NCBI GenBank assembly: GCA_965240325.2
Contig: OZ251222.1
Coordinates: 2,046,001 to 2,110,000, forward strand
Source of the DNA: Rebecca billardiae RCC1528
Lineage: Eukaryota > Protista > Haptophyta
Length of the DNA stretch: 64,000 nucleotides
Reading direction: 5' to 3'
Shown: positions 37,271-49,667 of the stretch, piece after piece
Position numbering within the stretch: position 1 is the stretch's first letter
How the letters are laid out: every line of letters starts with the position of its first letter
Notes under the pieces: model-generated
Databases searched by the model: none
Seen by the model: only the letters and a program-made list of their open reading frames with translations
Told to the model about the DNA's origin: nothing
Position numbers and translations under genes: made by a program

Positions 37271-37479
37271 GCTTACGCGTAGTGCTCCGGACTCGGCTCG
37301 CCCTTGCGCGCTCCTCCTCGAGCGACGAACGCGCCCGCGCGGGCAGAGCCCGCGCCCGGGTAAAAAACCTGCTGTGTTCGGCCTCGGCCCTCGGGCCGCC
37401 ATCCAATACCGGGTGCCGTTCGTCATAGTTCAGACTCGGCCAATCGGTAATCGGATGCGACGCATCATACTCGCCGGGA

Positions 37480-37720
37480 GCGCAAAGCTTCGTCGTCAGT
37501 AAAGTTGAGTACTTGACGGATTTTTGTTAGGACCTCCATGCATCACTGCGCTTGGGTCTCGTCCCATTTGGCAGCGCGCAAAGGTTCGTCGTTAGTAAAG
37601 TTGAGTAATTTGGCAGCGCGCAAAGGTTCGTCGTCAGTAAAGTTGAGTACTTGACGAGACTTTTTGCCAGGAGCCCAGGACCTCCATCGCACGCGCTTGG
37701 GTCCTCGTCCTATTTGGCAA
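37480..37720. repeat. Local tandem repeat (A-B-A-A-B, units about 40-45 bp)
   Basis: gcgcaaag(c/g)ttcgtcgt(c/t)agtaaagttgagta three times; aggacctccat...gcttgggtc..cgtcc.atttggca twice. Confidence 0.85.
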
Positions 37721-38987
37721 CATTATGGTCGTATGAAGATTTACAACAAATCGCAGATTCGTTCACCCAGATATACTGACAAATGCACGTCCACAGGCTC
37801 ACGTCCGTCCGTAGATACGGAATTGGAGCGGGCGCGGCTATTTCGTCAATCGAGTCTTGCTAATGCAAAGCAATGGGCCAATGTACCCCTCGAAAAAGCG
37901 AAAACTCACCCTCCAACAGCCCTCAAAATCGTCCCCCGTCCCCTTTTCTTTGATCAAAAGATCTTTTTGACAACGTAGTGAGGGCCCCCGGCGGGGCTCC
38001 ACGCTACGCGCTCCGCCCTGCACCGCGGGCCATGATACTACTACTTACTAGTAAAGCTACGACCAATCGTCTGTGCTGTCGACGACGACGCCGCGTGAGC
38101 CGTGCCCGTGACTGGCGTGACGCGGACCCGTCCGCTCCGCGCTCGCCGCTGGGGGCTAAGCTGATCAGTCACTCAGGCTATGGGGGTACTGCTCCCGCGT
38201 CAGCTCGGTCTTAACTACTATTATCCGGCGAATATACCGTGCCAGACCGTCCTATCAGGCATCAGCGCCTGTGTCTTAGTGTGTGCCCTGTGTCTGTGAG
38301 TGTGAGTCGTGTCTGCTGAGTGCTGTGACGACGGAGTACTCGGACGGCTGGCGCATCAGTTATGAGTTATTCAGTATCAGTCATAGTACGTTACCGAACG
38401 AATACCGGAGTTCGGACGATGCCCCTCGTGGCAGGAGTCGTGCGGCTCGTGCGCCGCCCGGCCTGCCGTCAGAAGTGTCGCTAATCACAGTTTATTTGTT
38501 TTAACGTGCGTAAGGCTCACGGTGGCAGGTTGCCGCGCCATCCTTCATCGCACGCTCTCCGAAGAGAGACCTGGAAACTGGTTTTGAACCCATGACCTCA
38601 GACGCAAGAGCACGCCGCCAGTACTCCCACTCGGCCACAGACCGGCGTCACAGTACAGTAACGTTCGCCAGCGGATCCGGTGAGTGTCCGGTCCGTGCCT
38701 CATCTCACCACCGTGCAGCTTTGGAAGTTACTCGATCCCGGAGGCACCGACGCACCGTCCTCCCAGCGACCGTCTCGGCCTTGATTCCCTGGAATCTAAT
38801 CACACTTGCTTCCTTGCTGTCCCGTCCAGCCTCATTGATCAGCGCTCGCGAAGCAGAATCAAGCCGACATCACGTGCTGCTGTTTTGTCCTCTCTGTCAC
38901 AGCGGCGCGTCGAGCCCCCTCGCGATCTCGGTCATCACCTCCCTCCCACGGCTACCAGCAGCGCCAAGCCGCGAGGTCTCCAGAGAA

Positions 38988-41261
38988 ATGAACGAGCACC
39001 TGCTCTTTCCAAACCCTGTGTCGCCGGCCACCCGAGACGAGATCATTGAGTGGCACCGCTGGCTCCACGGCGTTCACGACGGCGGCGGCCTCACCGCTTA
39101 CGAGATCATCAACCTGCGCAAAGACCATGCGACGGTGTTCCACGAGAACGTGGAGGAGTTTGTGCGGCAGCAAGTCCACAATCTGCGGCGTAGCTTTCAC
39201 CCCGACAGGCACGGCCAGGCTGGAGCCGATCTGCTCGAGATGTGCAACCAGATCACGAGCCTTGTCAACGAGGCGGCGCAAACTCTCGCCACGCCAGCGA
39301 GCCGGCAAACATACAACGTCGCGGTCGGATTGCAAACTTTCGATGGGAGGGACGCCACGATGGGCGCGCACGGCGGGATCAACCACGCGCTCCTGGAAGG
39401 CGCCTACGGCAGAGTGCGCCGGGCTCTGGACCGCGTGAGCGCCAACCTCGAGCTCGAGCTGCCCAAGATTGTCGTCGTCGGGCTGGAGTCGTCCGGCAAG
39501 AGCTCCACGCTCGAGCGATTGGCGATGCGGCAAGCCTTCCCGCGGGGCGAGCTGTTCACCACGCGCATGCCCATTTGCATGAAGCTGCGCCACCGCACGC
39601 ACGAGAACATTGTCATCCTCAGACACGTCCGGCTGGCCCAGCACGGCATGCCGCGCGAAACCTTGCAGGAGCTGCATGTCGAGCAGCCGTCCGCGTTTGA
39701 ATCCGCAGACCGTGCCGCACAGGCTGTGGTGCAGGATATCGTGCCTGTGGGCGTGATCGCCAGGGCGATTCAGGACTTCGTGCTCCACCAGCACCCCAAC
39801 GACACGGGGCGCAGCATCCTCACCGACGAGGTGATCGAGATCGAGATCCGCGCTCCGAATGTGCCCGAGCTGGAGCTGGTCGACTTGCCCGGCATCGTCG
39901 AGGTGCCGCAGGAGACGCGCCGCGCCTCGCTCGAGTGCACGCGCCGATATTTGCGCGACCCCAGCTGCCTCGTCCTGTGCGTGCTCTCGGCGGGGCCGGA
40001 CACGCTGCGCTCGAACGGCATGCTGCGCATCTTGGAGGAGGAGGCATCGCCGCAGAATCGCCTGTGGGAGCGCACGATTCTGGTGCTGACTAAGGTGGAC
40101 ATGCAGCACGGCGCCGGAGCCACCGCGCACTGGCGAGCCAGGCTCGGCGGTCGTCTGACCCCGGGTGCGGATGAGCTTGAGGACATCCCGGTGCGCCGGA
40201 TCGTGCCGTTGGTGAATCGCGACGCGGGCGCAGGCGCTGAGCTCGCTGATCTCCTGGCCGCGCTCAACGCCGAGAGAGCGTGGATGCAGCAGTGGTGCGC
40301 GGGGCATCCGCATCTCGGCTTCCGTGCGGATGACATGGGCATCAAAGGCCTTCTGCAGCACCTCTCTCACCTCGCGAACCTCCACATCCAGACGAGCTGG
40401 GTGCCTGCGAATCGGCAGCGCTTGCAAGGCATGCGCGAGAACGAGCTTCTCGAGAGGCGCAATCTTGGCGAAGCACCCGGTCGGCTGGAGCTGCTAGCTG
40501 TGCTGCGCGAGGCACAATCGGCGTCGGTGTCGCATCTCGTTATGGGTGACCGCCGGGACCGTCGGGACCGCGGCCACGAGGGCGTCTCGTACATCCGATG
40601 GGACGGCTGCTTTGAATGGTTGCCGAAGCAGCTGGACGCGTGCATGGACCTGGCGACACCGGCTGCGCAGCGAATGGACGAGCTGCTCGGGCAGTCCTCT
40701 CGCGATAACGACTGGGCATGTGTGCTGCTGCTGTCGCACGCGACCTCGAAGCTCCTGCAGGAGCATCTTCGCGCGGGTATCGTGGACACGCTCAAGCGAG
40801 TCGTCGACGAGGCGGCGGTGAACAGTCATGCGCTCCCCATCAAGCTCTCGCGATTTGCACGCCTTCGAGCGGCTTTGGTGCGGCGCGTGGAGACGAGTCA
40901 GGCTCTCGCCGATTCGATCATCCGACTGCGCTCCCTGATCGAGAACCACCCCATGGTGAGCGACTTGGCTGCAGCGAGCCTGGAGTCGGCGGGGGGCCGG
41001 ACGGAGCAGAGGATGAGCATCACGCAGGGCCAGATTCTGAGCCTCATCAGGCGCATGGCTATGCAGCACTGCCTGCTGCCAGTGCTCCAGGATGATCGTG
41101 GCGAGCTCTTCGAGACCGCCACGGTGACGGGAGACGGCGGCGATGTGGTCCTCGAGGAGGATGGAGAGCACGCGCGTCTCCGCGAGGCGCGCACAAACCA
41201 GATCGCGAGCCTCGACGACGCTCTTGCCGTCATCGAGGATCTGGCCGGCGGGCAAGCGTAG
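38988..41261 (+). CDS. J-domain-fused dynamin-family (Mx-like) GTPase
   Basis: RRSFHPDR...VNEAAQTLATPASRQTYN (J domain); LPKIVVVGLESSGKSS (G1), TRMP (G2), DLPG (G3), TKVD (G4); GED-like LEEDGEHARLRE...LDDALAVI; intronless; likely ATG at 38988. Confidence 0.88.
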   Translation: MNEHLLFPNPVSPATRDEIIEWHRWLHGVHDGGGLTAYEIINLRKDHATVFHENVEEFVRQQVHNLRRSFHPDRHGQAGADLLEMCNQITSLVNEAAQTLATPASRQTYNVAVGLQTFDGRDATMGAHGGINHALLEGAYGRVRRALDRVSANLELELPKIVVVGLESSGKSSTLERLAMRQAFPRGELFTTRMPICMKLRHRTHENIVILRHVRLAQHGMPRETLQELHVEQPSAFESADRAAQAVVQDIVPVGVIARAIQDFVLHQHPNDTGRSILTDEVIEIEIRAPNVPELELVDLPGIVEVPQETRRASLECTRRYLRDPSCLVLCVLSAGPDTLRSNGMLRILEEEASPQNRLWERTILVLTKVDMQHGAGATAHWRARLGGRLTPGADELEDIPVRRIVPLVNRDAGAGAELADLLAALNAERAWMQQWCAGHPHLGFRADDMGIKGLLQHLSHLANLHIQTSWVPANRQRLQGMRENELLERRNLGEAPGRLELLAVLREAQSASVSHLVMGDRRDRRDRGHEGVSYIRWDGCFEWLPKQLDACMDLATPAAQRMDELLGQSSRDNDWACVLLLSHATSKLLQEHLRAGIVDTLKRVVDEAAVNSHALPIKLSRFARLRAALVRRVETSQALADSIIRLRSLIENHPMVSDLAAASLESAGGRTEQRMSITQGQILSLIRRMAMQHCLLPVLQDDRGELFETATVTGDGGDVVLEEDGEHARLREARTNQIASLDDALAVIEDLAGGQA

Positions 41262-41524: not shown

Positions 41525-41525
<1 letters not shown>

Positions 41526-41559
<34 letters not shown>

Positions 41560-41576
41560 GACTCTCTCTCTCTCTC
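41526..41576. repeat. (CT)n microsatellite
   Basis: Direct observation. Confidence 0.95.
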
Positions 41577-41614
41577 GAACTAGCTAGTAACTCAGTCACA
41601 CAGTTAGTGACTCA

Positions 41615-41808
41615 GACTAATTCTATGATTTAAAGACACAGGTACGAGGGCGCAGCTCTCCTGATTCGTCTGTCGAAGTACTGATGATTGGAGGCGGAGC
41701 AGGATGTCCGCGGAGCGCGTTGGCCGTGGGTGAGGGAGTCGTCGCCGATGCTGAATGCTGATCACACGGAGGTAGTGGGCGCCCAGGGATGCTCAGCCGT
41801 CGTCGGTG
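41615..41808 (+). repeat. Dispersed repeat family copy
   Basis: Aligns with 59359-59570 (gactaattctatgat...gttggccgtgggtgagggagtcgtcgccgatgctga...ggaggtagtgggcgcccagggatgc). Confidence 0.88.
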
Positions 41809-41960
41809 GATCTCTTCTTCGACAATTCTCGTGATCCACAAGACGGCACGGCTGATTCTCGGCTGCCGCAGCTAGAGTATTGCCAGATGTAGTTATAAGT
41901 AAACGGTCGTCACTATTATTATAGTCATCATATACGAGATCGCATGATCGAGAATACTCG

Positions 41961-42368
<408 letters not shown>

Positions 42369-42657: not shown

Positions 42658-45374
42658 TCAGCCGCTCGACGCCAGCTTGTCCGCCATCTCCTGCCGCTTC
42701 GCCTCGCACAGAGCCTCGACGACCTCGGCCTCGAGCGCGTCCGGCTTGAGGCAGCGCTCGTGCGCGCTCGTCATCACCTCGTCGACGAGCGCCTGCAGCG
42801 AGATGCCGTCCTCGACGCAGTCCTGCATCGTCCAGCGCAGCATCGTCATGTCCACCTGCAGCTGCTGGTACCCGTGCTGGCTGAGCGTGCACAGCCGCAC
42901 GAGCTCGTACAGCGCTTTGAGCGCCAGCGTGAGCACGCGCCCGGCCGCGGCGCGCGTGCTACCGACCGCGTGGGCCAGGATCGGCACCTGCGAACGGCCG
43001 GGTGGCGCGGCGGCGGGGCGGGACGAGCGCGCGGCGGCGGGTTGGCACACACGCGCGCGCCGTTCGCCCGCGGCGCGTGCCACGCGCGGCGCACCTTCTG
43101 CGAGAACATCCGGTCGATGTCGGACTGGATGACGGAGGCGGACATCTGGCCCTGCCGCAGCCGTGACGCGTACACCTTTTGCGCAGGCAGCGCGCCCGTG
43201 GGCGACCAGAGCTGCTTGGCTGTGGTCGGCACGCTGGGCGGGACGGGCGCGCCGCCCGGCGTCGCGCCGCTCGGCTGCGCGGCCTCCGGGTACAGCCGCT
43301 CGAACGTGCCAAGCACGCGCGCCACGTGCCGCACGACCGTGTCCACGCACGCCGACACGGAGCGCGGGCGCGGCAGGCCGAGCCAGTCGGTCTGCACAAA
43401 GAAAGAGCGCATCTCCTCGGCGAGATCGCCCGCGAGCAGGTCGACGCACTGGATGTTGAGCGCCTCCGACGCGTCCTCCAGCTGCAGGACGACCGAGCTC
43501 ACCTGCGCCACGTGGGCGCGCGGCGCGCGCGCGCGCGCGCACGCGCCAGCACGATTGTCGGCCACGGGTGCGAGGGTGCACGCAGGGGCAGCCACCGCGC
43601 GTCTTGTCACGCGCACGGCTCAGCTGCGCATCGCGCAGCGGGCGCGCGCGCGTACCGGCAGCGGGGCAGCGAACTCGGCCTGGGCGAACATGAGGTGCCC
43701 GGACACGATGCGTTGCATGTCCGTGCGCACGCGCGTCGCCAGCTCCGTGCACAGCGCGCACGAGAGGAACGCGGCGGACGCAGCGCGCCACGCCTCAGCG
43801 CGGCCGTCGGCAGCGCCGCTCGCGGCGCCTGCGCGCTCGGATGGCGCGCCGCGCGCCGGCGCGAGGTCGGCTCGGCGCAGGCTCAGGACAAAGTCGCGGA
43901 GGCTGGCGAGCAGCTGGTTGACCGCCTCGCGCACCAGGCCCTGCCCTGGCAGCGCGAGCAGCAGCGGGCGGGTCGACTGCATCGTCGAGTCGATGAGGCC
44001 CATCACCGCGCCCGCCGCCTTGCCGACCGCTTCGTGAACCGCATCGGCGAGCACGAGCGCCTCGCCGCCCGACGAGGCGGCCGAGGCGTCGGCGCAGAGA
44101 TCGGACGCTGCGGCGAGGCTGCGCTCGCCGAGGAGCGCCATCTCGCTGCTGATCCCCGCGCGCGCGAGCCCCGCGCCCAGCGCGCACGCGCGCGGCACGA
44201 GCGCGTCGAGCGGCGCGGACGCCTCTGCGCCGCCCTCGGCAATGGTGCGCGCCGCGTCCGTCAGCGCGCGGATCGCGCACGTGAGGGGCTCGATGTCGGG
44301 CGAAGGCCCGACCTGGGCGGCCTTCACCGCGTCGGTCGTCATCTGCGCGAACGTGTCGAACGTCTCGTGCACGCTCTGCTCCAGCGCGCCCCGCTTGTGC
44401 TCGGTGCCCGCGCTGTGGTGCGGGGCGTCCGAACCGCCGGCCGCCGCCGCCGCCGCGCCGCCGCCGCCGAGGAAGAGCATGGCAAAGGCGCGCACGTACT
44501 CGAGGGTCGCGGGCACGTACTCGGCGGCGACCTGCGCGTAGTACGCCTCGAACTCGTCCGCGCTCGCGCCGGCGCCGGGCTGCGCAGACGCCGGCAGCGC
44601 CGCGAGCCGCTTGAGCACGAGCGCGCGGGAGCGCGAGACAAAGCGGTGCAGCAGGTCGTCCTCGTTGCCCTGCAGCTGCAGCAGCAGCCGCACGCTCTCG
44701 GCGAGCTTGGGCGCCGGGGTGCTCTCGGCGCCGATCAGGTCGGAGAGCTTGTGCTTGAGCCGGCCCATGATGTCCACCGCCTCGTCGTGGATCGGCTGGA
44801 ACGACGCGAGGTGGCCGTAGTGCTTGAGGATGTTGGTGGCGGCGTGGTAGAAGTGCACCGCCTTCTCGTGCTCGCCCGCCTCGATGCACTCCTGCAGCTT
44901 GGTCGGCAGGTCGAAGAGGAACTGGAGCTTGACGAGAAGCTTGCGCACCCCGTTCAGCTGCTCGAGCTGCCCGCGGCGGCCGGTCACGTTGGACGCGATC
45001 GCGCGGTTGGACTCGATGATCGTCTCCATGTTGGTCGCGAGCTGGTTCATCTGCTCCTCCATGCCCTCGACCTTCTGCTTCATCGCGCGGATGGTGTCGG
45101 TGGCGGAGATGAACTTGTTGTAGTTCTCGTACACCAGCATCTGCATGTCCGAGTCCAGGCTCTTGATCTCCGTCACCATGTCGTTGCCCTTGCGCACGAG
45201 GTCCGAGAGCGACTGATTCTCGAGCAGCTGGTTCACATACTTGTCCGCGTTGAAGTTGGGGCCGTCCACGTCGAGGGGGTCGGCTGAGCTGCCACCCACG
45301 CCGTAGTACGAGCTGAGCAGGCCGCGCGTGCGGCGCTCGCGAGGCCGCTCGTCCCGCGAACGCTCGTCCGCCAT
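42658..45374 (-). CDS. VPS51: GARP/EARP complex subunit Vps51, 3 exons (introns 43655-43503, 43094-42988)
   Basis: LLSSYYG, EIKSLDSDMQMLVYENYNKFISATDTIRAMK, KLQFLFDLP; C-terminal DIDRMFSQK and LKALYELVRLCT...QQLQVD. Confidence 0.95.
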
Positions 45375-45624
45375 CCGCCCCACCGCCGAGGCGCCGATCT
45401 CCTGTTGGAGCGAGGCGCCGCCGAGCTCTCGCTGGTCGTCGATCGCTCGGCGCGGCAAATTCCGCCGCGGCCGAAAATGATGGCGGCGCGCTGAATCTCT
45501 TGCACGGCATTTCCGCCATTTAGAAACTAGCACGAGAAAATACGCCATCATCATCATCGCGAGCGGGTGCCAGGCATCTCGAGTCGTCGTCGTCGCCGTT
45601 GGGGCGCGCGACGAGCGCGCCGCG

Positions 45625-45894
45625 ATGGCGAACTCGTGCACGAAGCAGAGGGAAGCGCTGCTGAAATGCCTCTCCCAGACGGAGTGCATGGCGAAGGGTG
45701 GCACTGTGGAGGAATGCCTCAACCTGACCGACGAGGAAGGGGGATGCATGTCCGCGCGTATCTCGTACATGCAGTGCAAGCGAGGTCAGCTTGACATGCG
45801 CAACCGCTTCAAGGGAAACAACATCGCGGGCCTCAGTATTCCCACCACCGCGAAGCAAGCGAGCGAGGCAGACAGCGGCTCTGCCAGGGAATGA
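45625..45894 (+). CDS. PET191: Cytochrome c oxidase assembly factor PET191/COA5
   Basis: Twin Cx9C-type pattern and CKRGQLDMRNRFKGN signature. Confidence 0.93.
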   Translation: MANSCTKQREALLKCLSQTECMAKGGTVEECLNLTDEEGGCMSARISYMQCKRGQLDMRNRFKGNNIAGLSIPTTAKQASEADSGSARE

Positions 45895-47595: not shown

Positions 47596-49341
47596 TCAGC
47601 TGTCAGCAGCGAGTGAGCCGGCGGCGCGAGCAGCAGCCGTTGGGGCCTCGGTACCTGCCAATGGTGGCGAGGCTGCGAGCACGTTCTCGCCTCCGTCTAG
47701 GAGGCTGTGGGTGAGCTCAGGCCGCGGCTGCCACGAGCGCAGCCTCTGCCTCGTCGGGATTGTCGAGGCGAGGGCCCCCGTTACTCGCATGCATGCACAG
47801 CGAAGTGAGGTCGTGAGCTCGGATCGCCTGTACGCTGCCGTCACCACAGCTGCGATGACCACCACGCGTGCAAGGGCAGCAGCCGGCAGCTGGCATAGCA
47901 CGGCCGTGTTGATGACGACCGCCGCGACGGGCAGTAGCGGCACAAGTGGGCACGCGAACACCCCGGCAGGCGCATCATCGTACAAGTGGCGCGAGCACAG
48001 CGCGATGGCCGCGCCGAGTGCTGCTGAGCCGCCGATCAGGATGCACGGGAGCGGCCACACGCCCGCGCGCGGCAAGCCCGACGCTGCTGCGGTCGATGCG
48101 ACGGCCGCGACGAGCGTGCCGTGCATCTCGTTGCTGCGCCCGCCACTCACCAGGCCGTGCGCGCGCAGCAGCAGCAGAGACACGGCGGTGAGCAAGTACG
48201 AGAGAACGACCCCGGCGCTCAGGAGCGAAGCCAGCGCGCTCACCTCAAGGGCGCCGCTGAGCACAACGGCTACGGCGCCGCACCAGAGCTGCGCATGCAC
48301 GGGCGTGGCCGCCGCGCCGCGCACCTGCATCAGCCAGCGCGACCACCACGCCCGGCCGCCGTCTGTGCGCGCCATCGAGAGGTACAGCCGCGCCTGCGCG
48401 TACAGGCCGACGAGCCCGCCCGTCGCGATACCGATGGCCGCGCCAGCGTCCACCAGGGGTGCGACCCAGGTGGCGGACGCGCGGCCCGCAAAGAGCTGCG
48501 CCATCGGCGCGGAGACGTCGATTCGGTCGTACCTGGTCGCCCCTGTCAGCAGCGCCGACACGGCGACGTACAGCACCGCGCACGTCAGGATGCAGACGCA
48601 GATCCCTATGGGCACATCGCGCTGCGGTCGGAGGGCTTCCTCCGCCGCAAAGGCGATGCAGTCAAAGCCCGTGAAGGCGAAGAAGACGAGAGCCGTCGCC
48701 TCGGCGACGGGTGCTGGCCCGCACGGCGCGAACGGCAGCCAGTTCGTGGGGCGCACGAGCCCCGCGCCCGCGGCGATCACGATGGCCACGATGCCGAGCT
48801 TGAGCGCGCACAGGCAGTTGTTCAGCCTGGCGCTATGCTGGACGCCGCAGCACAGCACCGCGGAGGCGACGACGTTGAGGGTGGGCGCGAGCACGCTGAG
48901 CGAGAGGACGCCAGCCACCGGCCACGCCGCCAGGACGGCTGGGACACGAAAGCCTGCCGGAAGCATCGCTTTCACAGCTGCAACCGCATAGACGGCAAAC
49001 GAGCGGCTGCCCACCGCCGCACCGACGTGGTAATCAGCGAGGAGGTTCGCCGCGCAGATAGTAGCCGGTATCTCGCCGAGCGCCGCGCGCACGTACACGT
49101 ACGCCCCGCCTGACACTGGGTAGCGCCCACTCAGCTCGGCGAAGCAGAGTCCGTTCAGCAAGCAGGCACCTGCGGCGAGGGCAAACGCAAGCACAACTGC
49201 TGGGCCAGCGTCGCGCGCGGCGATGCCTGTGATGAAGAAGATGCCCGAGCCGACAGACGCGCCGATACCGAGCAGGCACATGGAAACCAGCCCGAGATGC
49301 GGCTTGAGCGCTCCATCGCCGCCATTCAGCGCTGGCGTCAT
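47596..49341 (-). CDS. APC-superfamily cationic amino-acid transporter (CAT-like)
   Basis: LGIGASVGSGIF, AGPAVVLAF, CFAELSGRYPVSGGAYVY, FFAFTGFD, EEALRPQRDVPIGI, C-terminal FACPLVPLLP; start uncertain. Confidence 0.92.
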   Translation of the reverse strand: MTPALNGGDGALKPHLGLVSMCLLGIGASVGSGIFFITGIAARDAGPAVVLAFALAAGACLLNGLCFAELSGRYPVSGGAYVYVRAALGEIPATICAANLLADYHVGAAVGSRSFAVYAVAAVKAMLPAGFRVPAVLAAWPVAGVLSLSVLAPTLNVVASAVLCCGVQHSARLNNCLCALKLGIVAIVIAAGAGLVRPTNWLPFAPCGPAPVAEATALVFFAFTGFDCIAFAAEEALRPQRDVPIGICVCILTCAVLYVAVSALLTGATRYDRIDVSAPMAQLFAGRASATWVAPLVDAGAAIGIATGGLVGLYAQARLYLSMARTDGGRAWWSRWLMQVRGAAATPVHAQLWCGAVAVVLSGALEVSALASLLSAGVVLSYLLTAVSLLLLRAHGLVSGGRSNEMHGTLVAAVASTAAASGLPRAGVWPLPCILIGGSAALGAAIALCSRHLYDDAPAGVFACPLVPLLPVAAVVINTAVLCQLPAAALARVVVIAAVVTAAYRRSELTTSLRCACMRVTGALASTIPTRQRLRSWQPRPELTHSLLDGGENVLAASPPLAGTEAPTAAARAAGSLAADS

Positions 49342-49667
49342 CCACACCTTGTCGGCCACCTTTGCGGCCGGCCGTCCGGTCGCCTCGATCGGCGGCGCTC
49401 GTCGTTCGGGCAGACGGGCACTCGTCAAAGATGCCCAGCGAAATACTGTAGCGCTTTTAAAAGCATTGTATTTAGGAGAACGGCATCATCTTCCTGGTCA
49501 TCATCAAGAACTCGCACGCGCGGTGTGGGCGTGTGGCACAGTGTCATGCAGCGAGCATCTCGTCAATCATCATCCCGGGAGGCCCCGGAGACCGCCATCA
49601 CTAGCACCGAAGTATGGCAAACTAGTGAGTGCTGCACGGACCAAACGCGGCCAGCCCCCGTGAGCAC

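What the first reader, a model, noticed from the sequence alone, without database searches (positions are those of the whole stretch)
38988..41261. J-domain fused to an Mx/dynamin-like GTPase
Seen: an HPD-containing J-domain directly N-terminal to a complete dynamin G domain, a highly divergent stalk and a GED-like end. The gene is intronless and sits in a repeat/microsatellite island. Known: J-domains recruit and activate Hsp70; Mx and related dynamins are antiviral; canonical dynamin, DRP1, Vps1 and Mx lack J-domains. Inference: a lineage-specific restriction factor that couples oligomerisation on a target to Hsp70-driven disassembly.
Basis: partly seen in the sequence, partly recalled or inferred. 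Interest (0 to 1): 0.75.

Follow-up and report, generated by a model that had tools for sequence, protein, structure and literature searches.

The report
J-domain fused to dynamin-type GTPase
A GC-rich marine alga has an intact, intron-free gene that joins an Hsp70-recruiting J domain to a complete self-assembling dynamin-type GTPase; it belongs to a protist family I found in no paper, and its function is untested.

Summary
Window 38988-41261 (+) is one uninterrupted 757-codon gene. It has an N-terminal J domain with HPD (residues 71-73), a glycine-rich linker, a dynamin G domain with all five GTP motifs, and a helical stalk with a terminal bundle helix.

This copy's J domain is below Pfam's cut-off on its own. 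A profile of five relatives hits only J domains in the PDB, and the AlphaFold model (pLDDT 90) superposes on solved J domains (Z 8-9). Codon periodicity starts exactly at 38988, so the J domain is coded.

The fusion is not unique to this lineage. At least 20 clusters of relatives carry it, from a Pavlovales haptophyte, a dinoflagellate, a thraustochytrid and many uncultured marine protists. They fall into a single clade in G-domain trees, and HPD was lost or altered at least five times.

The protein is about as far from Vps1/Drp1 as from Mx, so "Mx-like" and "antiviral" are unsupported, though not excluded.

Best reading: a class-C J-protein whose scaffold is a GTP-driven polymer that brings Hsp70 to its assembly site. 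This is inferred, not shown. I found no paper on the architecture. The scan had already noted a paralogue 877 kb away in the same genome.

The parts
38988..41261 (+). Complete coding sequence of the J-domain/dynamin-related protein (757 codons plus stop), no intron
   Evidence: ORF list. End-to-end alignment with relatives P0001-P0004 at 38-42% identity. GC3 of 0.82 matches neighbouring genes.
38592..38987 (+). In-frame upstream extension; not coding, probably 5' UTR or promoter
   Evidence: No codon periodicity (GC1/2/3 0.60/0.63/0.61). Not conserved in relatives, whose contigs have in-frame stops just upstream of the shared start.
38988..39086 (+). N-terminal extension (residues 1-33) with a helix at 16-27 and an invariant Trp22, packed on the J domain in the model
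   Evidence: AF2 model mdf4d00c757e4, pLDDT 85-96. W22 is invariant in the five-member subfamily.
39087..39323 (+). J domain (residues 34-112): helix I 37-40, an inserted short helix 45-50, helix II 52-69, HPD loop, helix III 80-99, helix IV 103-112
   Evidence: Profile search against the PDB hits only J domains. Pfam DnaJ is found in all five subfamily members, best E 2.7e-9. AF2 plus VIA-align give Z 8-9 to HscB, PFA0660w and DnaJ J domains.
39198..39206 (+). HPD tripeptide (His71-Pro72-Asp73), the Hsp70-activating motif
   Evidence: Read directly from the sequence. It sits between helices II and III of the model.
39324..39377 (+). Conserved glycine-rich linker (residues 113-130) joining the J domain to the first bundle-signalling-element helix
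   Evidence: G114, G120, D122, G126, G129 and I131 are invariant across nine family members. pLDDT is low.
39378..40307 (+). First BSE helix (131-149) and dynamin G domain (about 155-440), with G1 39480-39503, G2 39558-39566, G3 39882-39893, G4 40089-40100, G5 40212-40220
   Evidence: Pfam Dynamin_N E 4.7e-24. PDB hits to Vps1, dynamin and Drp1 G domains at 1e-22 to 1e-17. Motif positions.
40308..41132 (+). Second BSE helix and helical stalk (residues 441-715), the most divergent part, with a disordered basic loop at 521-542 at the predicted stalk tip
   Evidence: AF2 helices 451-700. Foldseek alignment to full-length dynamin, Drp1 and Mx. Only 26-32% identity to the nearest relatives, against 54% in the G domain.
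41163..41249 (+). C-terminal helix (residues 726-754), GED-like third BSE helix
   Evidence: AF2 helix with pLDDT 78-89. Drp1 chain 4bej aligns to profile positions 144-698 of 704. No Pfam GED hit.
41525..42366 (.). Downstream microsatellite block: (TC)26, (AT)33, (TG)70, (AT)62
   Evidence: Tandem Repeats Finder. GC falls to 0.44 here.

Best explanation
The gene encodes a soluble, probably cytosolic class-C (type III) J-domain protein. Its non-J part is a complete dynamin-related GTPase made of a G domain, a bundle signalling element and a stalk.

Shown by computation: both modules are intact and lie in one reading frame, and the fusion is old and conserved in a clade of marine-protist proteins.

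Inferred mechanism:
1. The stalk drives self-assembly and the G domains dimerise on GTP, as in other dynamins.
2. Assembly therefore displays an array of J domains, each held next to the BSE by a short conserved glycine-rich linker.
3. The array recruits ATP-bound cytosolic Hsp70 and triggers its ATPase through HPD.
4. Many Hsp70s then clamp onto segments at the assembly site and pull the assembly apart.

I think it somewhat more likely that the substrate is the polymer itself (self-uncoating or turnover, about 35%) than a bound target (about 25%). Because the J domain hangs on the BSE, which swings during GTP hydrolysis, Hsp70 access could be gated by nucleotide state. That last point is speculation.
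For: - The ORF is intact and shows the host's codon bias from 38988 onward.
- The G1-G5 motifs are canonical and Dynamin_N scores E 4.7e-24.
- The full-length fold matches dynamin, Drp1 and Mx, including the stalk.
- The J domain is supported three ways: HPD is present, the profile hits only J domains, and the model superposes on the DnaK-bound DnaJ J domain 5nro_B at rmsd 1.8 A over 63 residues and on 6rzy_A at 1.8 A over 70.
- 20 of 39 N-terminal regions from relatives hit Pfam DnaJ, best E 3.4e-17. HPD is kept in 12 relatives' clusters as well as in this copy.
- All J-bearing members fall in one clade of the G-domain tree (SH-like 88 and SH-aLRT 84). The AU test does not reject strict monophyly (p 0.154). 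The fusion has therefore been maintained for a long time.
- The linker G114/G120/D122/G126/G129 is invariant.
- There is no TM segment, and the N-terminus is acidic.
- A precedent in trans: the rice DnaJ protein OsDjA9 binds OsDRP1E and destabilises it in an HPD-dependent way (PMC7688324).
- From general knowledge: auxilin/GAK recruits Hsc70 to clathrin lattices and also binds dynamin.
Against: - There is no expression, localisation or biochemical evidence; no RNA run was listed.
- This copy's J domain scores below Pfam's cut-off. Two helix-II positions that I recall as basic in E. coli DnaJ (from memory, not tested here) read His and Asn in this copy.
- HPD was lost or altered at least five times in the family (HTD, HAD, QPD, HPN, an HPAD insertion, or deletion) while the GTPase stayed. 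Hsp70 activation is therefore dispensable for at least some members.
- The full-length model rests on nine sequences (pLDDT 70.8), so the stalk geometry and the position of the J domain are uncertain.
Confidence: 0.55

Rival explanations
1. Antiviral or anti-parasite restriction factor. The dynamin part oligomerises on a pathogen structure such as a giant-virus capsid or factory, and the J domain brings Hsp70 to dismantle it.
For: - The stalk and its tip loop are the fastest-diverging parts: 26-32% identity against 54% in the G domain, with a variable insert at 521-542. In Mx, from general knowledge, such a loop determines specificity.
- The gene has a paralogue in the same genome, and unchecked notes from this scan describe other dynamin fusions there.
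- Langley et al. 2025 show Mx-like and virus-associated dynamin clades in haptophytes (PMC11789081).
- One relative, from Hondaea, is auto-annotated as 'Mx1'.
Against: - There is no specific Mx affinity: Vps1 114 and Drp1 104 bits against Mx1 98.
- No induction or infection data exist.
- No relative was found on viral contigs.
- Giant-virus dynamins match no better than cellular ones (12-16% identity).
- A divergent stalk is also expected from plain drift in a non-essential paralogue.
Confidence: 0.17
2. The J domain is structural or regulatory (J-like) and does not activate Hsp70. It would act as an N-terminal module that tunes assembly or binds a partner, much as Tim16/Pam16 or ARC6 keep the fold without the function.
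For: - HPD has been lost or mutated repeatedly in the clade, including QPD in the cluster that holds the Pavlovales protein and complete loss in the Hondaea and P0005-P0008 lineages.
- This copy scores below Pfam's cut-off.
- The subfamily has an extra N-terminal helix and an insert between helices I and II.
Against: - This copy and three of its four closest relatives keep an exact HPD in the right loop.
- R106 and Y109 at the helix III/IV turn are invariant across 23 sequences.
- Twelve clusters of relatives, spread through the clade, keep HPD, which argues for selection on it.
Confidence: 0.2
3. Housekeeping membrane-remodelling dynamin (organelle division or vesicle scission) that uses Hsp70 only for its own folding, recycling or degradation.
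For: - The G-domain motifs are canonical and the fold is dynamin/Drp1-like.
- Codon usage matches the host.
- The neighbouring gene has a Vps51/Exo84-type trafficking domain.
- The OsDjA9-OsDRP1E precedent concerns mitochondrial fission.
Against: - No PH domain, TM segment, targeting peptide or recognisable lipid-binding insert was found.
- The family is patchy and fast-evolving rather than universal.
- Classical Drp1-type proteins form a separate, well-supported outgroup (99*).
Confidence: 0.15
4. Silent or decaying gene copy in a repeat-rich region.
For: - No RNA run was listed.
- The word-index search returned no protein closer than 40% identity, although a neighbouring gene's product has a 99% match there.
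- The gene is flanked by microsatellites.
Against: - The 757 codons contain no stop or frameshift.
- Strong codon periodicity is maintained along the whole length.
- All catalytic motifs and HPD are intact.
Confidence: 0.05

Closest known systems
Classical dynamin-related proteins (Vps1, Drp1/Dnm1, dynamin-1) and Mx proteins
   Same: It has a G domain with G1-G5 motifs, a three-helix BSE, a helical stalk and no TM segment. The full-length model aligns to 5a3f, 8t1h, 4whj and 3szr over 640-790 columns. Profile scores run from 86 to 114 bits.
   Different: It carries an N-terminal J domain and glycine-rich linker. It has no PH domain and no Pfam Dynamin_M or GED hit. It belongs to a separate clade from Drp1-type outgroups (99*) and is no closer to Mx than to Vps1/Drp1.
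Auxilin/GAK (class-C J-domain proteins that recruit Hsc70 to a self-assembled lattice)
   Same: A J domain is attached to a module that sits on a polymeric lattice. The model's extra N-terminal helix aligns with the extra helix of the auxilin J domain (2qwn_B, Z 5.9, from model residue 16). From general knowledge, auxilin also binds dynamin.
   Different: Here the lattice-forming protein and the J domain are one polypeptide. The J domain is N-terminal, not C-terminal. No clathrin-binding or PTEN-like region is present.
DNAJC27/RBJ (small Ras-like GTPase fused to a J domain; PDB 6jmg)
   Same: It is a GTPase and a J domain in one chain. The J domain matches at Z 7.8.
   Different: RBJ has a Rab-like small GTPase at the N-terminus and the J domain at the C-terminus, and it does not polymerise. 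Here the order is reversed and the GTPase is a large, self-assembling dynamin.
OsDjA9-OsDRP1E complex of rice (PMC7688324)
   Same: A J-domain protein acts on a dynamin-related protein, and the effect depends on HPD.
   Different: These are two separate proteins. OsDjA9 is a class-A DnaJ with a mitochondrial targeting sequence, and the outcome reported is autophagic degradation of the DRP.
HscB/Jac1 J domains
   Same: These are the best sequence and structure matches to the N-terminus (4it5 at 9e-8; 3bvo_B at Z 8.9). They share long helices II and III and a long segment after HPD.
   Different: The C-terminal helical IscU-binding domain of HscB is absent, and the J domain is followed by a dynamin. 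I see no link to Fe-S assembly.
Database members of the same family: Hondaea fermentalgiana GBG25638.1 ('Mx1'), Pavlovales sp. CCMP2436 KAJ1633040.1 ('hypothetical protein'), a Prorocentrum cordatum EukProt model
   Same: Hondaea shares the clade and the N-terminal J-type region in the G-domain tree. The Pavlovales and Prorocentrum proteins were too short for the tree; they share the J-type region and rank among the closest kin in the profile search.
   Different: Hondaea lacks HPD, the Pavlovales cluster has QPD, and Prorocentrum has HPN. The window's copy keeps HPD and is only about 27-30% identical to them where they were aligned.

Membership tests
J-domain proteins (Pfam PF00226 DnaJ) | Four-helix J fold with an antiparallel helix II/III hairpin | tested here: met
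   AF2 model of residues 1-125 has pLDDT 89.8 and pTM 0.81. Nearly all of the top 50 VIA-align matches are J domains, at Z up to 8.9 and rmsd 1.8 A over 70 residues to 6rzy_A.
J-domain proteins (Pfam PF00226 DnaJ) | HPD tripeptide in the loop between helices II and III | tested here: met
   H71-P72-D73 lies between helix 52-69 and helix 80-99.
J-domain proteins (Pfam PF00226 DnaJ) | Significant sequence match to the family model | tested here: inconclusive
   This copy alone scores 16.3-21.2 bits against a cut-off of 27.8. At family level the match is clear: the profile hits HscB at 9e-8 and many DnaJ chains, and 20 of 39 relatives' N-termini hit DnaJ, best E 3.4e-17.
J-domain proteins (Pfam PF00226 DnaJ) | HPD-dependent stimulation of Hsp70 ATPase | not testable with these tools
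   Needs a biochemical assay.
Dynamin superfamily, classical DRP type | Large G domain with G1-G5 motifs (Pfam Dynamin_N) | tested here: met
   E 4.7e-24. Motifs GLESSGKS, TTR, DLPG, TKVD and VNR are present.
Dynamin superfamily, classical DRP type | BSE and helical stalk (middle domain plus GED) | tested here: met
   Met by predicted structure only. Foldseek aligns 640-790 columns to full-length dynamin, Drp1 and Mx at E 1e-17 to 1e-12. Pfam Dynamin_M and GED are not hit, and model pLDDT is 70.8.
Dynamin superfamily, classical DRP type | GTP-dependent self-assembly and assembly-stimulated GTPase activity | not testable with these tools
   Needs purified protein.
Mx / Mx-like clade | Groups phylogenetically with Mx to the exclusion of Dyn/Drp/Vps1 | tested here: inconclusive
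   Profile scores are Vps1 114, Drp1 104, Mx1 98, dynamin-1 88 and Mx2 86 bits. No Mx sequence could be brought into a tree with these tools. The family does not appear in the Langley et al. supplement.
Mx / Mx-like clade | Induced by infection and restricts a virus | not testable with these tools
   No RNA run was listed.
HscB/Jac1 Fe-S co-chaperones | C-terminal helical IscU-binding domain after the J domain | tested here: not met
   NCBIfam HscB models match only the J part (residues 59-113), at 14-20 bits against cut-offs of 47-198. A dynamin follows the J domain.
Auxilin/GAK | Clathrin-binding and PTEN-like regions with a C-terminal J domain | tested here: not met
   No such Pfam hits, and the J domain is N-terminal.
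DNAJC27/RBJ | Rab-like small GTPase N-terminal to the J domain | tested here: not met
   The GTPase is dynamin-type and lies C-terminal to the J domain.

The most novel reading that the evidence does not exclude
A two-engine machine. A GTP-driven dynamin polymer exposes its built-in J domains under control of its power stroke, through the BSE to which they are tethered by a conserved glycine-rich linker. Bursts of Hsp70 pulling are thereby fired on whatever the polymer has encircled. In marine protists this would act as a cell-autonomous defence that dismantles giant-virus structures. It would be one branch of a wider protist dynamin clade that swaps N-terminal effector modules (J domain here; RING- and U-box-type in others).
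Probability: 0.1. Interest if true: 0.85.

Novelty: new variant of a known kind. Interest (0 to 1): 0.6.

Why it matters
Dynamins and Hsp70s are two of the cell's main mechanochemical remodelling systems, and they are normally linked only through separate adaptors such as auxilin. A natural, ancient and repeatedly retained covalent fusion gives a direct, testable handle on two questions. One is how Hsp70 can be aimed at a self-assembling GTPase lattice. The other is what the poorly known non-classical dynamin clades of marine protists do. The family's natural HPD variants (QPD, HTD, HAD, HPN and loss) are ready-made controls. If the antiviral reading were true, it would extend dynamin-based immunity to ecologically dominant algae and their giant viruses.

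Tried and rejected
- **RNA evidence.** The look-up of sequencing runs (kind rna) listed no run, so read laying was never used.
- **Upstream start at 38592.** Rejected on codon periodicity and on the homologues' upstream stops.
- **tRNA in the 5' region.** By eye, 38575-38600 looks like the reverse complement of a tRNA T-arm. ARAGORN and Rfam found no tRNA. The Rfam hits at 41.9-42.4 kb are microsatellite artefacts.
- **Mobile-element carriage.** No inverted or direct repeats flank the gene; only microsatellites do.
- **Viral origin.** The viral-contig scan found no relative. Giant-virus dynamins match structurally no better than cellular ones.
- **Naming the organism through a conserved neighbour (AAA ATPase).** This returned only an unnamed 99% Logan hit. 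The nearest named relative of the J-dynamin subfamily is from Pavlovales sp. CCMP2436, but that locus has 55% GC and an interrupted gene model, so it is a different organism.
- **Second word-index search with a 15-sequence profile.** It found nothing new.
- **ESM Atlas feature search.** It returned only generic dynamin clusters.
- **Placement in the Langley et al. clades.** None of the accessions or taxa I could link appear in their supplement.
- **'Proteostasis-module' pattern in sister clades.** Only one sub-threshold RING (P0145) and weak ubiquitin and UBA hits turned up, which is too weak to build on.
- **HscB membership.** Rejected because the C-terminal domain is absent.
Full report
**The gene**

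Window 38988-41261 (+) is a single open reading frame of 757 codons. An in-frame ATG at 38592 could extend it by 132 residues, but three results argue against that start:
- The extension has flat codon-position composition (GC1/2/3 0.60/0.63/0.61). From 38988 onward GC3 jumps to about 0.8 and GC2 falls to about 0.4, and this pattern holds to the stop.
- Overall GC3 is 0.82, like the neighbouring genes at 0.81-0.92.
- The closest relatives start at the equivalent Met, and two of their contigs carry in-frame stops 60 and 42 nt upstream.

The coding region therefore begins at MNEHLL and includes the N-terminal domain. The ORF aligns end to end with its relatives without gaps that would suggest introns. 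The window holds only this one copy.

**The dynamin part**

Pfam Dynamin_N matches residues 161-370 at E 4.7e-24. phmmer against PDB sequences gives Vps1, dynamin-1 and Drp1 G domains at 1e-22 to 1e-17. All five GTP-binding motifs are canonical: GLESSGKS 165-172, TTR 191-193, DLPG 299-302, TKVD 368-371 and VNR 409-411.

Pfam's middle-domain and GED models are not hit. Even so, the AlphaFold2 model (nine-sequence alignment, mean pLDDT 70.8) is all-helical after residue 419 and ends in a long helix at 726-754. Foldseek aligns the whole model over 640-790 columns to full-length dynamin-3, Drp1, dynamin-1, MxB and MxA at E 1e-17 to 1e-12.

The stalk is the least conserved region, at 26-32% identity to the nearest relatives against 54% in the G domain. 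It contains a disordered, basic, length-variable loop at 521-542. There is no PH domain, no hydrophobic segment (maximum 19-residue Kyte-Doolittle mean 1.39) and no basic presequence (net charge -4 over the first 40 residues). I infer a soluble cytosolic protein.

**The J domain**

On its own this copy is marginal: Pfam DnaJ scores 16.3 bits in the full protein and 21.2 bits for the excised N-terminus, against a cut-off of 27.8. The case rests on four other results:
- All five members of the immediate subfamily hit DnaJ, best E 2.7e-9.
- A profile built from their N-termini retrieves essentially only J domains from the PDB: Vibrio HscB at 9.2e-8, a mitoribosomal DnaJ-like protein at 3.8e-5, and dozens of DnaJA/B/C J domains at 1e-4 to 1e-2.
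- A 23-sequence alignment of family N-termini shows the classic pattern: TAYEVLGV in helix I, x-AY-x-L-x-WHPDR in helix II and the loop, Q-x-I-x-EAYETL in helix III, and an invariant R106 and Y109 at the start of helix IV.
- AlphaFold2 on that alignment gives a confident model (pLDDT 89.8, pTM 0.81) with helices at 37-40, 52-69, 80-99 and 103-112 and HPD (71-73) in the II/III loop.

Foldseek's top matches are nearly all J domains (probability 0.93-1.00, target TM 0.6-0.84), although E-values are weak for so small a domain. VIA-align gives the following:

| Chain | Protein | Z | rmsd / aligned residues |
|---|---|---|---|
| 3bvo_B | human HscB | 8.9 | 2.8 A / 88 |
| 6rzy_A | Plasmodium PFA0660w J domain | 8.8 | 1.8 A / 70 (all) |
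| 5nro_B | DnaJ J domain bound to DnaK | 7.1 | 1.8 A / 63 |

The subfamily adds an N-terminal helix (16-27, with invariant W22) and a short insert between helices I and II. The extra helix aligns with the extra helix of the auxilin J domain at lower Z (5.9). The resemblance to HscB is confined to the J domain, because HscB's substrate-binding domain is absent.

**The linker**

Between the J domain and the first BSE helix lie 18 residues (113-130) in which G114, G120, D122, G126, G129 and I131 are invariant across nine family members, including those that have lost HPD. The J domain is therefore tethered, through a conserved element, to the part of a dynamin that moves during GTP hydrolysis. 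That conservation is observed. Any coupling between the two is my inference.

**The family**

The word-index search found eight relatives. P0001-P0004 are 36-40% identical over the full length. P0005-P0008 are about 34-37% identical in local alignment (30-31% across the full alignment) and have a shortened N-terminus.

The exhaustive profile search found 6017 dynamin-family hits, 205 of them below 1e-30. Among the best 150 are many more proteins whose match begins in the J region. Of 39 N-terminal regions of 90 or more residues preceding the P-loop, this copy's among them, 20 hit Pfam DnaJ, best E 3.4e-17.

The state of HPD in relatives' clusters:

| State | Members |
|---|---|
| HPD retained (12 clusters) | P0001, P0002, P0003, P0021, P0022, P0024, P0025, P0031, P0043, P0046, P0062 among them |
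| HTD | P0020 |
| HAD | P0023 |
| QPD | P0032, whose cluster contains the Pavlovales sp. CCMP2436 protein KAJ1633040.1 |
| HPN | P0037, Prorocentrum cordatum |
| HPAD (insertion) | P0004 |
| Lost | P0005-P0008, P0018, P0019 (an MMETSP transcript), P0027 (Hondaea fermentalgiana GBG25638.1, auto-named 'Mx1'), P0028 |

One cluster (P0025) adds C-terminal WD40 repeats.

In G-domain trees every J-bearing sequence falls in one clade:
- FastTree, 146 rows: SH-like support 88, with three non-J rows inside.
- IQ-TREE LG+C20, 46 rows: SH-aLRT 84, with two long-branched non-J rows inside.

The AU test does not reject strict monophyly (p 0.154). The window's protein groups with P0001-P0004 at 100%. Classical Drp1-type proteins form a separate outgroup (99*).

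The simplest reading is one old fusion, long retention, and at least five independent losses or alterations of HPD. The fusion is therefore neither a chance juxtaposition nor private to this genome.

**Organism**

The window averages about 68% GC and carries EsV-1-7, ARM-BTB, patatin, Ank-MYND, Vps51-type and amino-acid-permease genes. A neighbouring AAA protein has only an unnamed 99% match. Earlier notes of this scan call the genome a haptophyte. My only independent support is that the nearest named member of the subfamily is from a Pavlovales haptophyte. That locus is 55% GC with an interrupted gene model, so it is a different species.

**Is it Mx-like?**

The family profile scores Vps1 at 114 bits, Drp1 104, Mx1 98, plant DRP1A 89, dynamin-1 88, Mx2 86, Mgm1 77 and OPA1 70. 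Structure matches rank dynamin, Drp1 and Mx together. That is equidistance, not Mx affinity.

Langley et al. 2025 (PMC11789081) describe three Mx-like lineages and the virus-associated MADS and PADS clades, several with haptophyte members. They do not mention J domains, and their supplement contains none of the accessions I could link to this family. I could not bring Mx sequences into a tree with the tools at hand, so placement remains open.

No relative was found on viral contigs. Giant-virus dynamins match the model no better than cellular ones.

**Literature**

Full-text searches for J-domain or DnaJ together with dynamin terms found no description of this architecture. The nearest precedents:
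- Rice OsDjA9, a separate DnaJ protein that binds OsDRP1E and destabilises it in an HPD-dependent way (PMC7688324).
- RBJ/DNAJC27, a small GTPase with a C-terminal J domain, which turned up as a structural match (6jmg_B).
- Auxilin/GAK, from general knowledge.

**Mechanism**

What is shown: both modules are intact, fused in one frame, and kept together over long evolutionary time.

What follows from established knowledge of the two families: J domains with HPD dock on ATP-bound Hsp70 and trigger hydrolysis next to a client, and dynamin-type proteins polymerise through their stalks and dimerise their G domains on GTP.

What I infer: polymerisation produces a dense array of J domains, which is the arrangement that makes Hsp70 effective at taking lattices apart, as in clathrin uncoating. 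Hsp70 would then act at the assembly site.

- I give about 55% to Hsp70 recruitment being the function of this copy's J domain.
- Within that, I lean to the polymer itself as substrate (about 35%) over a captured target (about 25%).
- The repeated loss of HPD in relatives is the main counter-evidence. It supports the rival that the domain can serve a structural role (20%).
- The antiviral reading (17%) is a special case of target-directed action. At present it rests only on the divergent stalk, the paralogy and analogy.

**Surroundings**

Downstream lie four microsatellites at 41525-42366, and upstream are short tandem repeats. No terminal repeats enclose the gene.

**Earlier findings of this scan**

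The scan had already recorded a paralogous J-dynamin gene about 877 kb beyond this window in the same genome. Its follow-up reached the same broad verdict: real fusion, undescribed protist family, not specifically Mx-like, not mobile. My results on this copy agree. They add the single-clade result, the count of HPD losses, the named taxa and the conserved linker.

**Verdict**

This is a real feature and a new variant of known kinds, mechanistically suggestive but functionally untested. Interest 0.6.

Noticed in passing
window 38520-38650: By eye, the stretch around 38575-38600 (GGTTTTGAACCCATGACCTC) resembles the reverse complement of a tRNA T-arm. ARAGORN and Rfam report no tRNA there, so it may be a tRNA-derived relic or a chance match.
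   Followed up: partly
window 37470-37649: A 42-nt unit is repeated twice in tandem at 97-98% identity (37566-37649), with a third, 76%-identical copy 96 nt upstream. It lies in the gene-poor stretch 5' of the J-dynamin gene.
   Followed up: no
window 38952-40427 (-): A 491-aa antisense ORF overlaps the gene. Such long ORFs occur in several frames across this GC-rich window and look like composition artefacts.
   Followed up: no
window 43623-45779 (-): The next gene downstream has a Vps51/Exo84/COG1-type N-terminal domain (E 9e-26). An amino-acid permease lies at 47599-49428 (-).
   Followed up: partly
L006 716-3811 (protein P0025, JGI sample 3300045054): A relative from a low-GC (42%) organism carries J domain, dynamin and a C-terminal WD40 beta-propeller array in one 1031-aa protein. 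A Vps4-type AAA fragment lies just upstream.
   Followed up: partly
protein P0019 (MMETSP transcript, 1088 aa): This relative holds two dynamin G domains in tandem. The full J-less DRP is followed by a second P-loop and G domain starting near residue 800.
   Followed up: no
L007 6001-7883 (Pavlovales sp. CCMP2436, MU631407.1): The annotated 356-aa model KAJ1633040.1 is interrupted within the P-loop by a stretch that contains an assembly gap. The deposited protein is probably an incomplete model of a J(QPD)-dynamin gene.
   Followed up: partly
proteins P0145, P0058 and other 'otherN' rows: Other members of the wider protist dynamin clade carry different N-terminal pieces: a RING-type finger below Pfam's cut-off in P0145, and an elicitin fragment in the oomycete-like P0058. 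This hints at module swapping at the N-terminus.
   Followed up: partly
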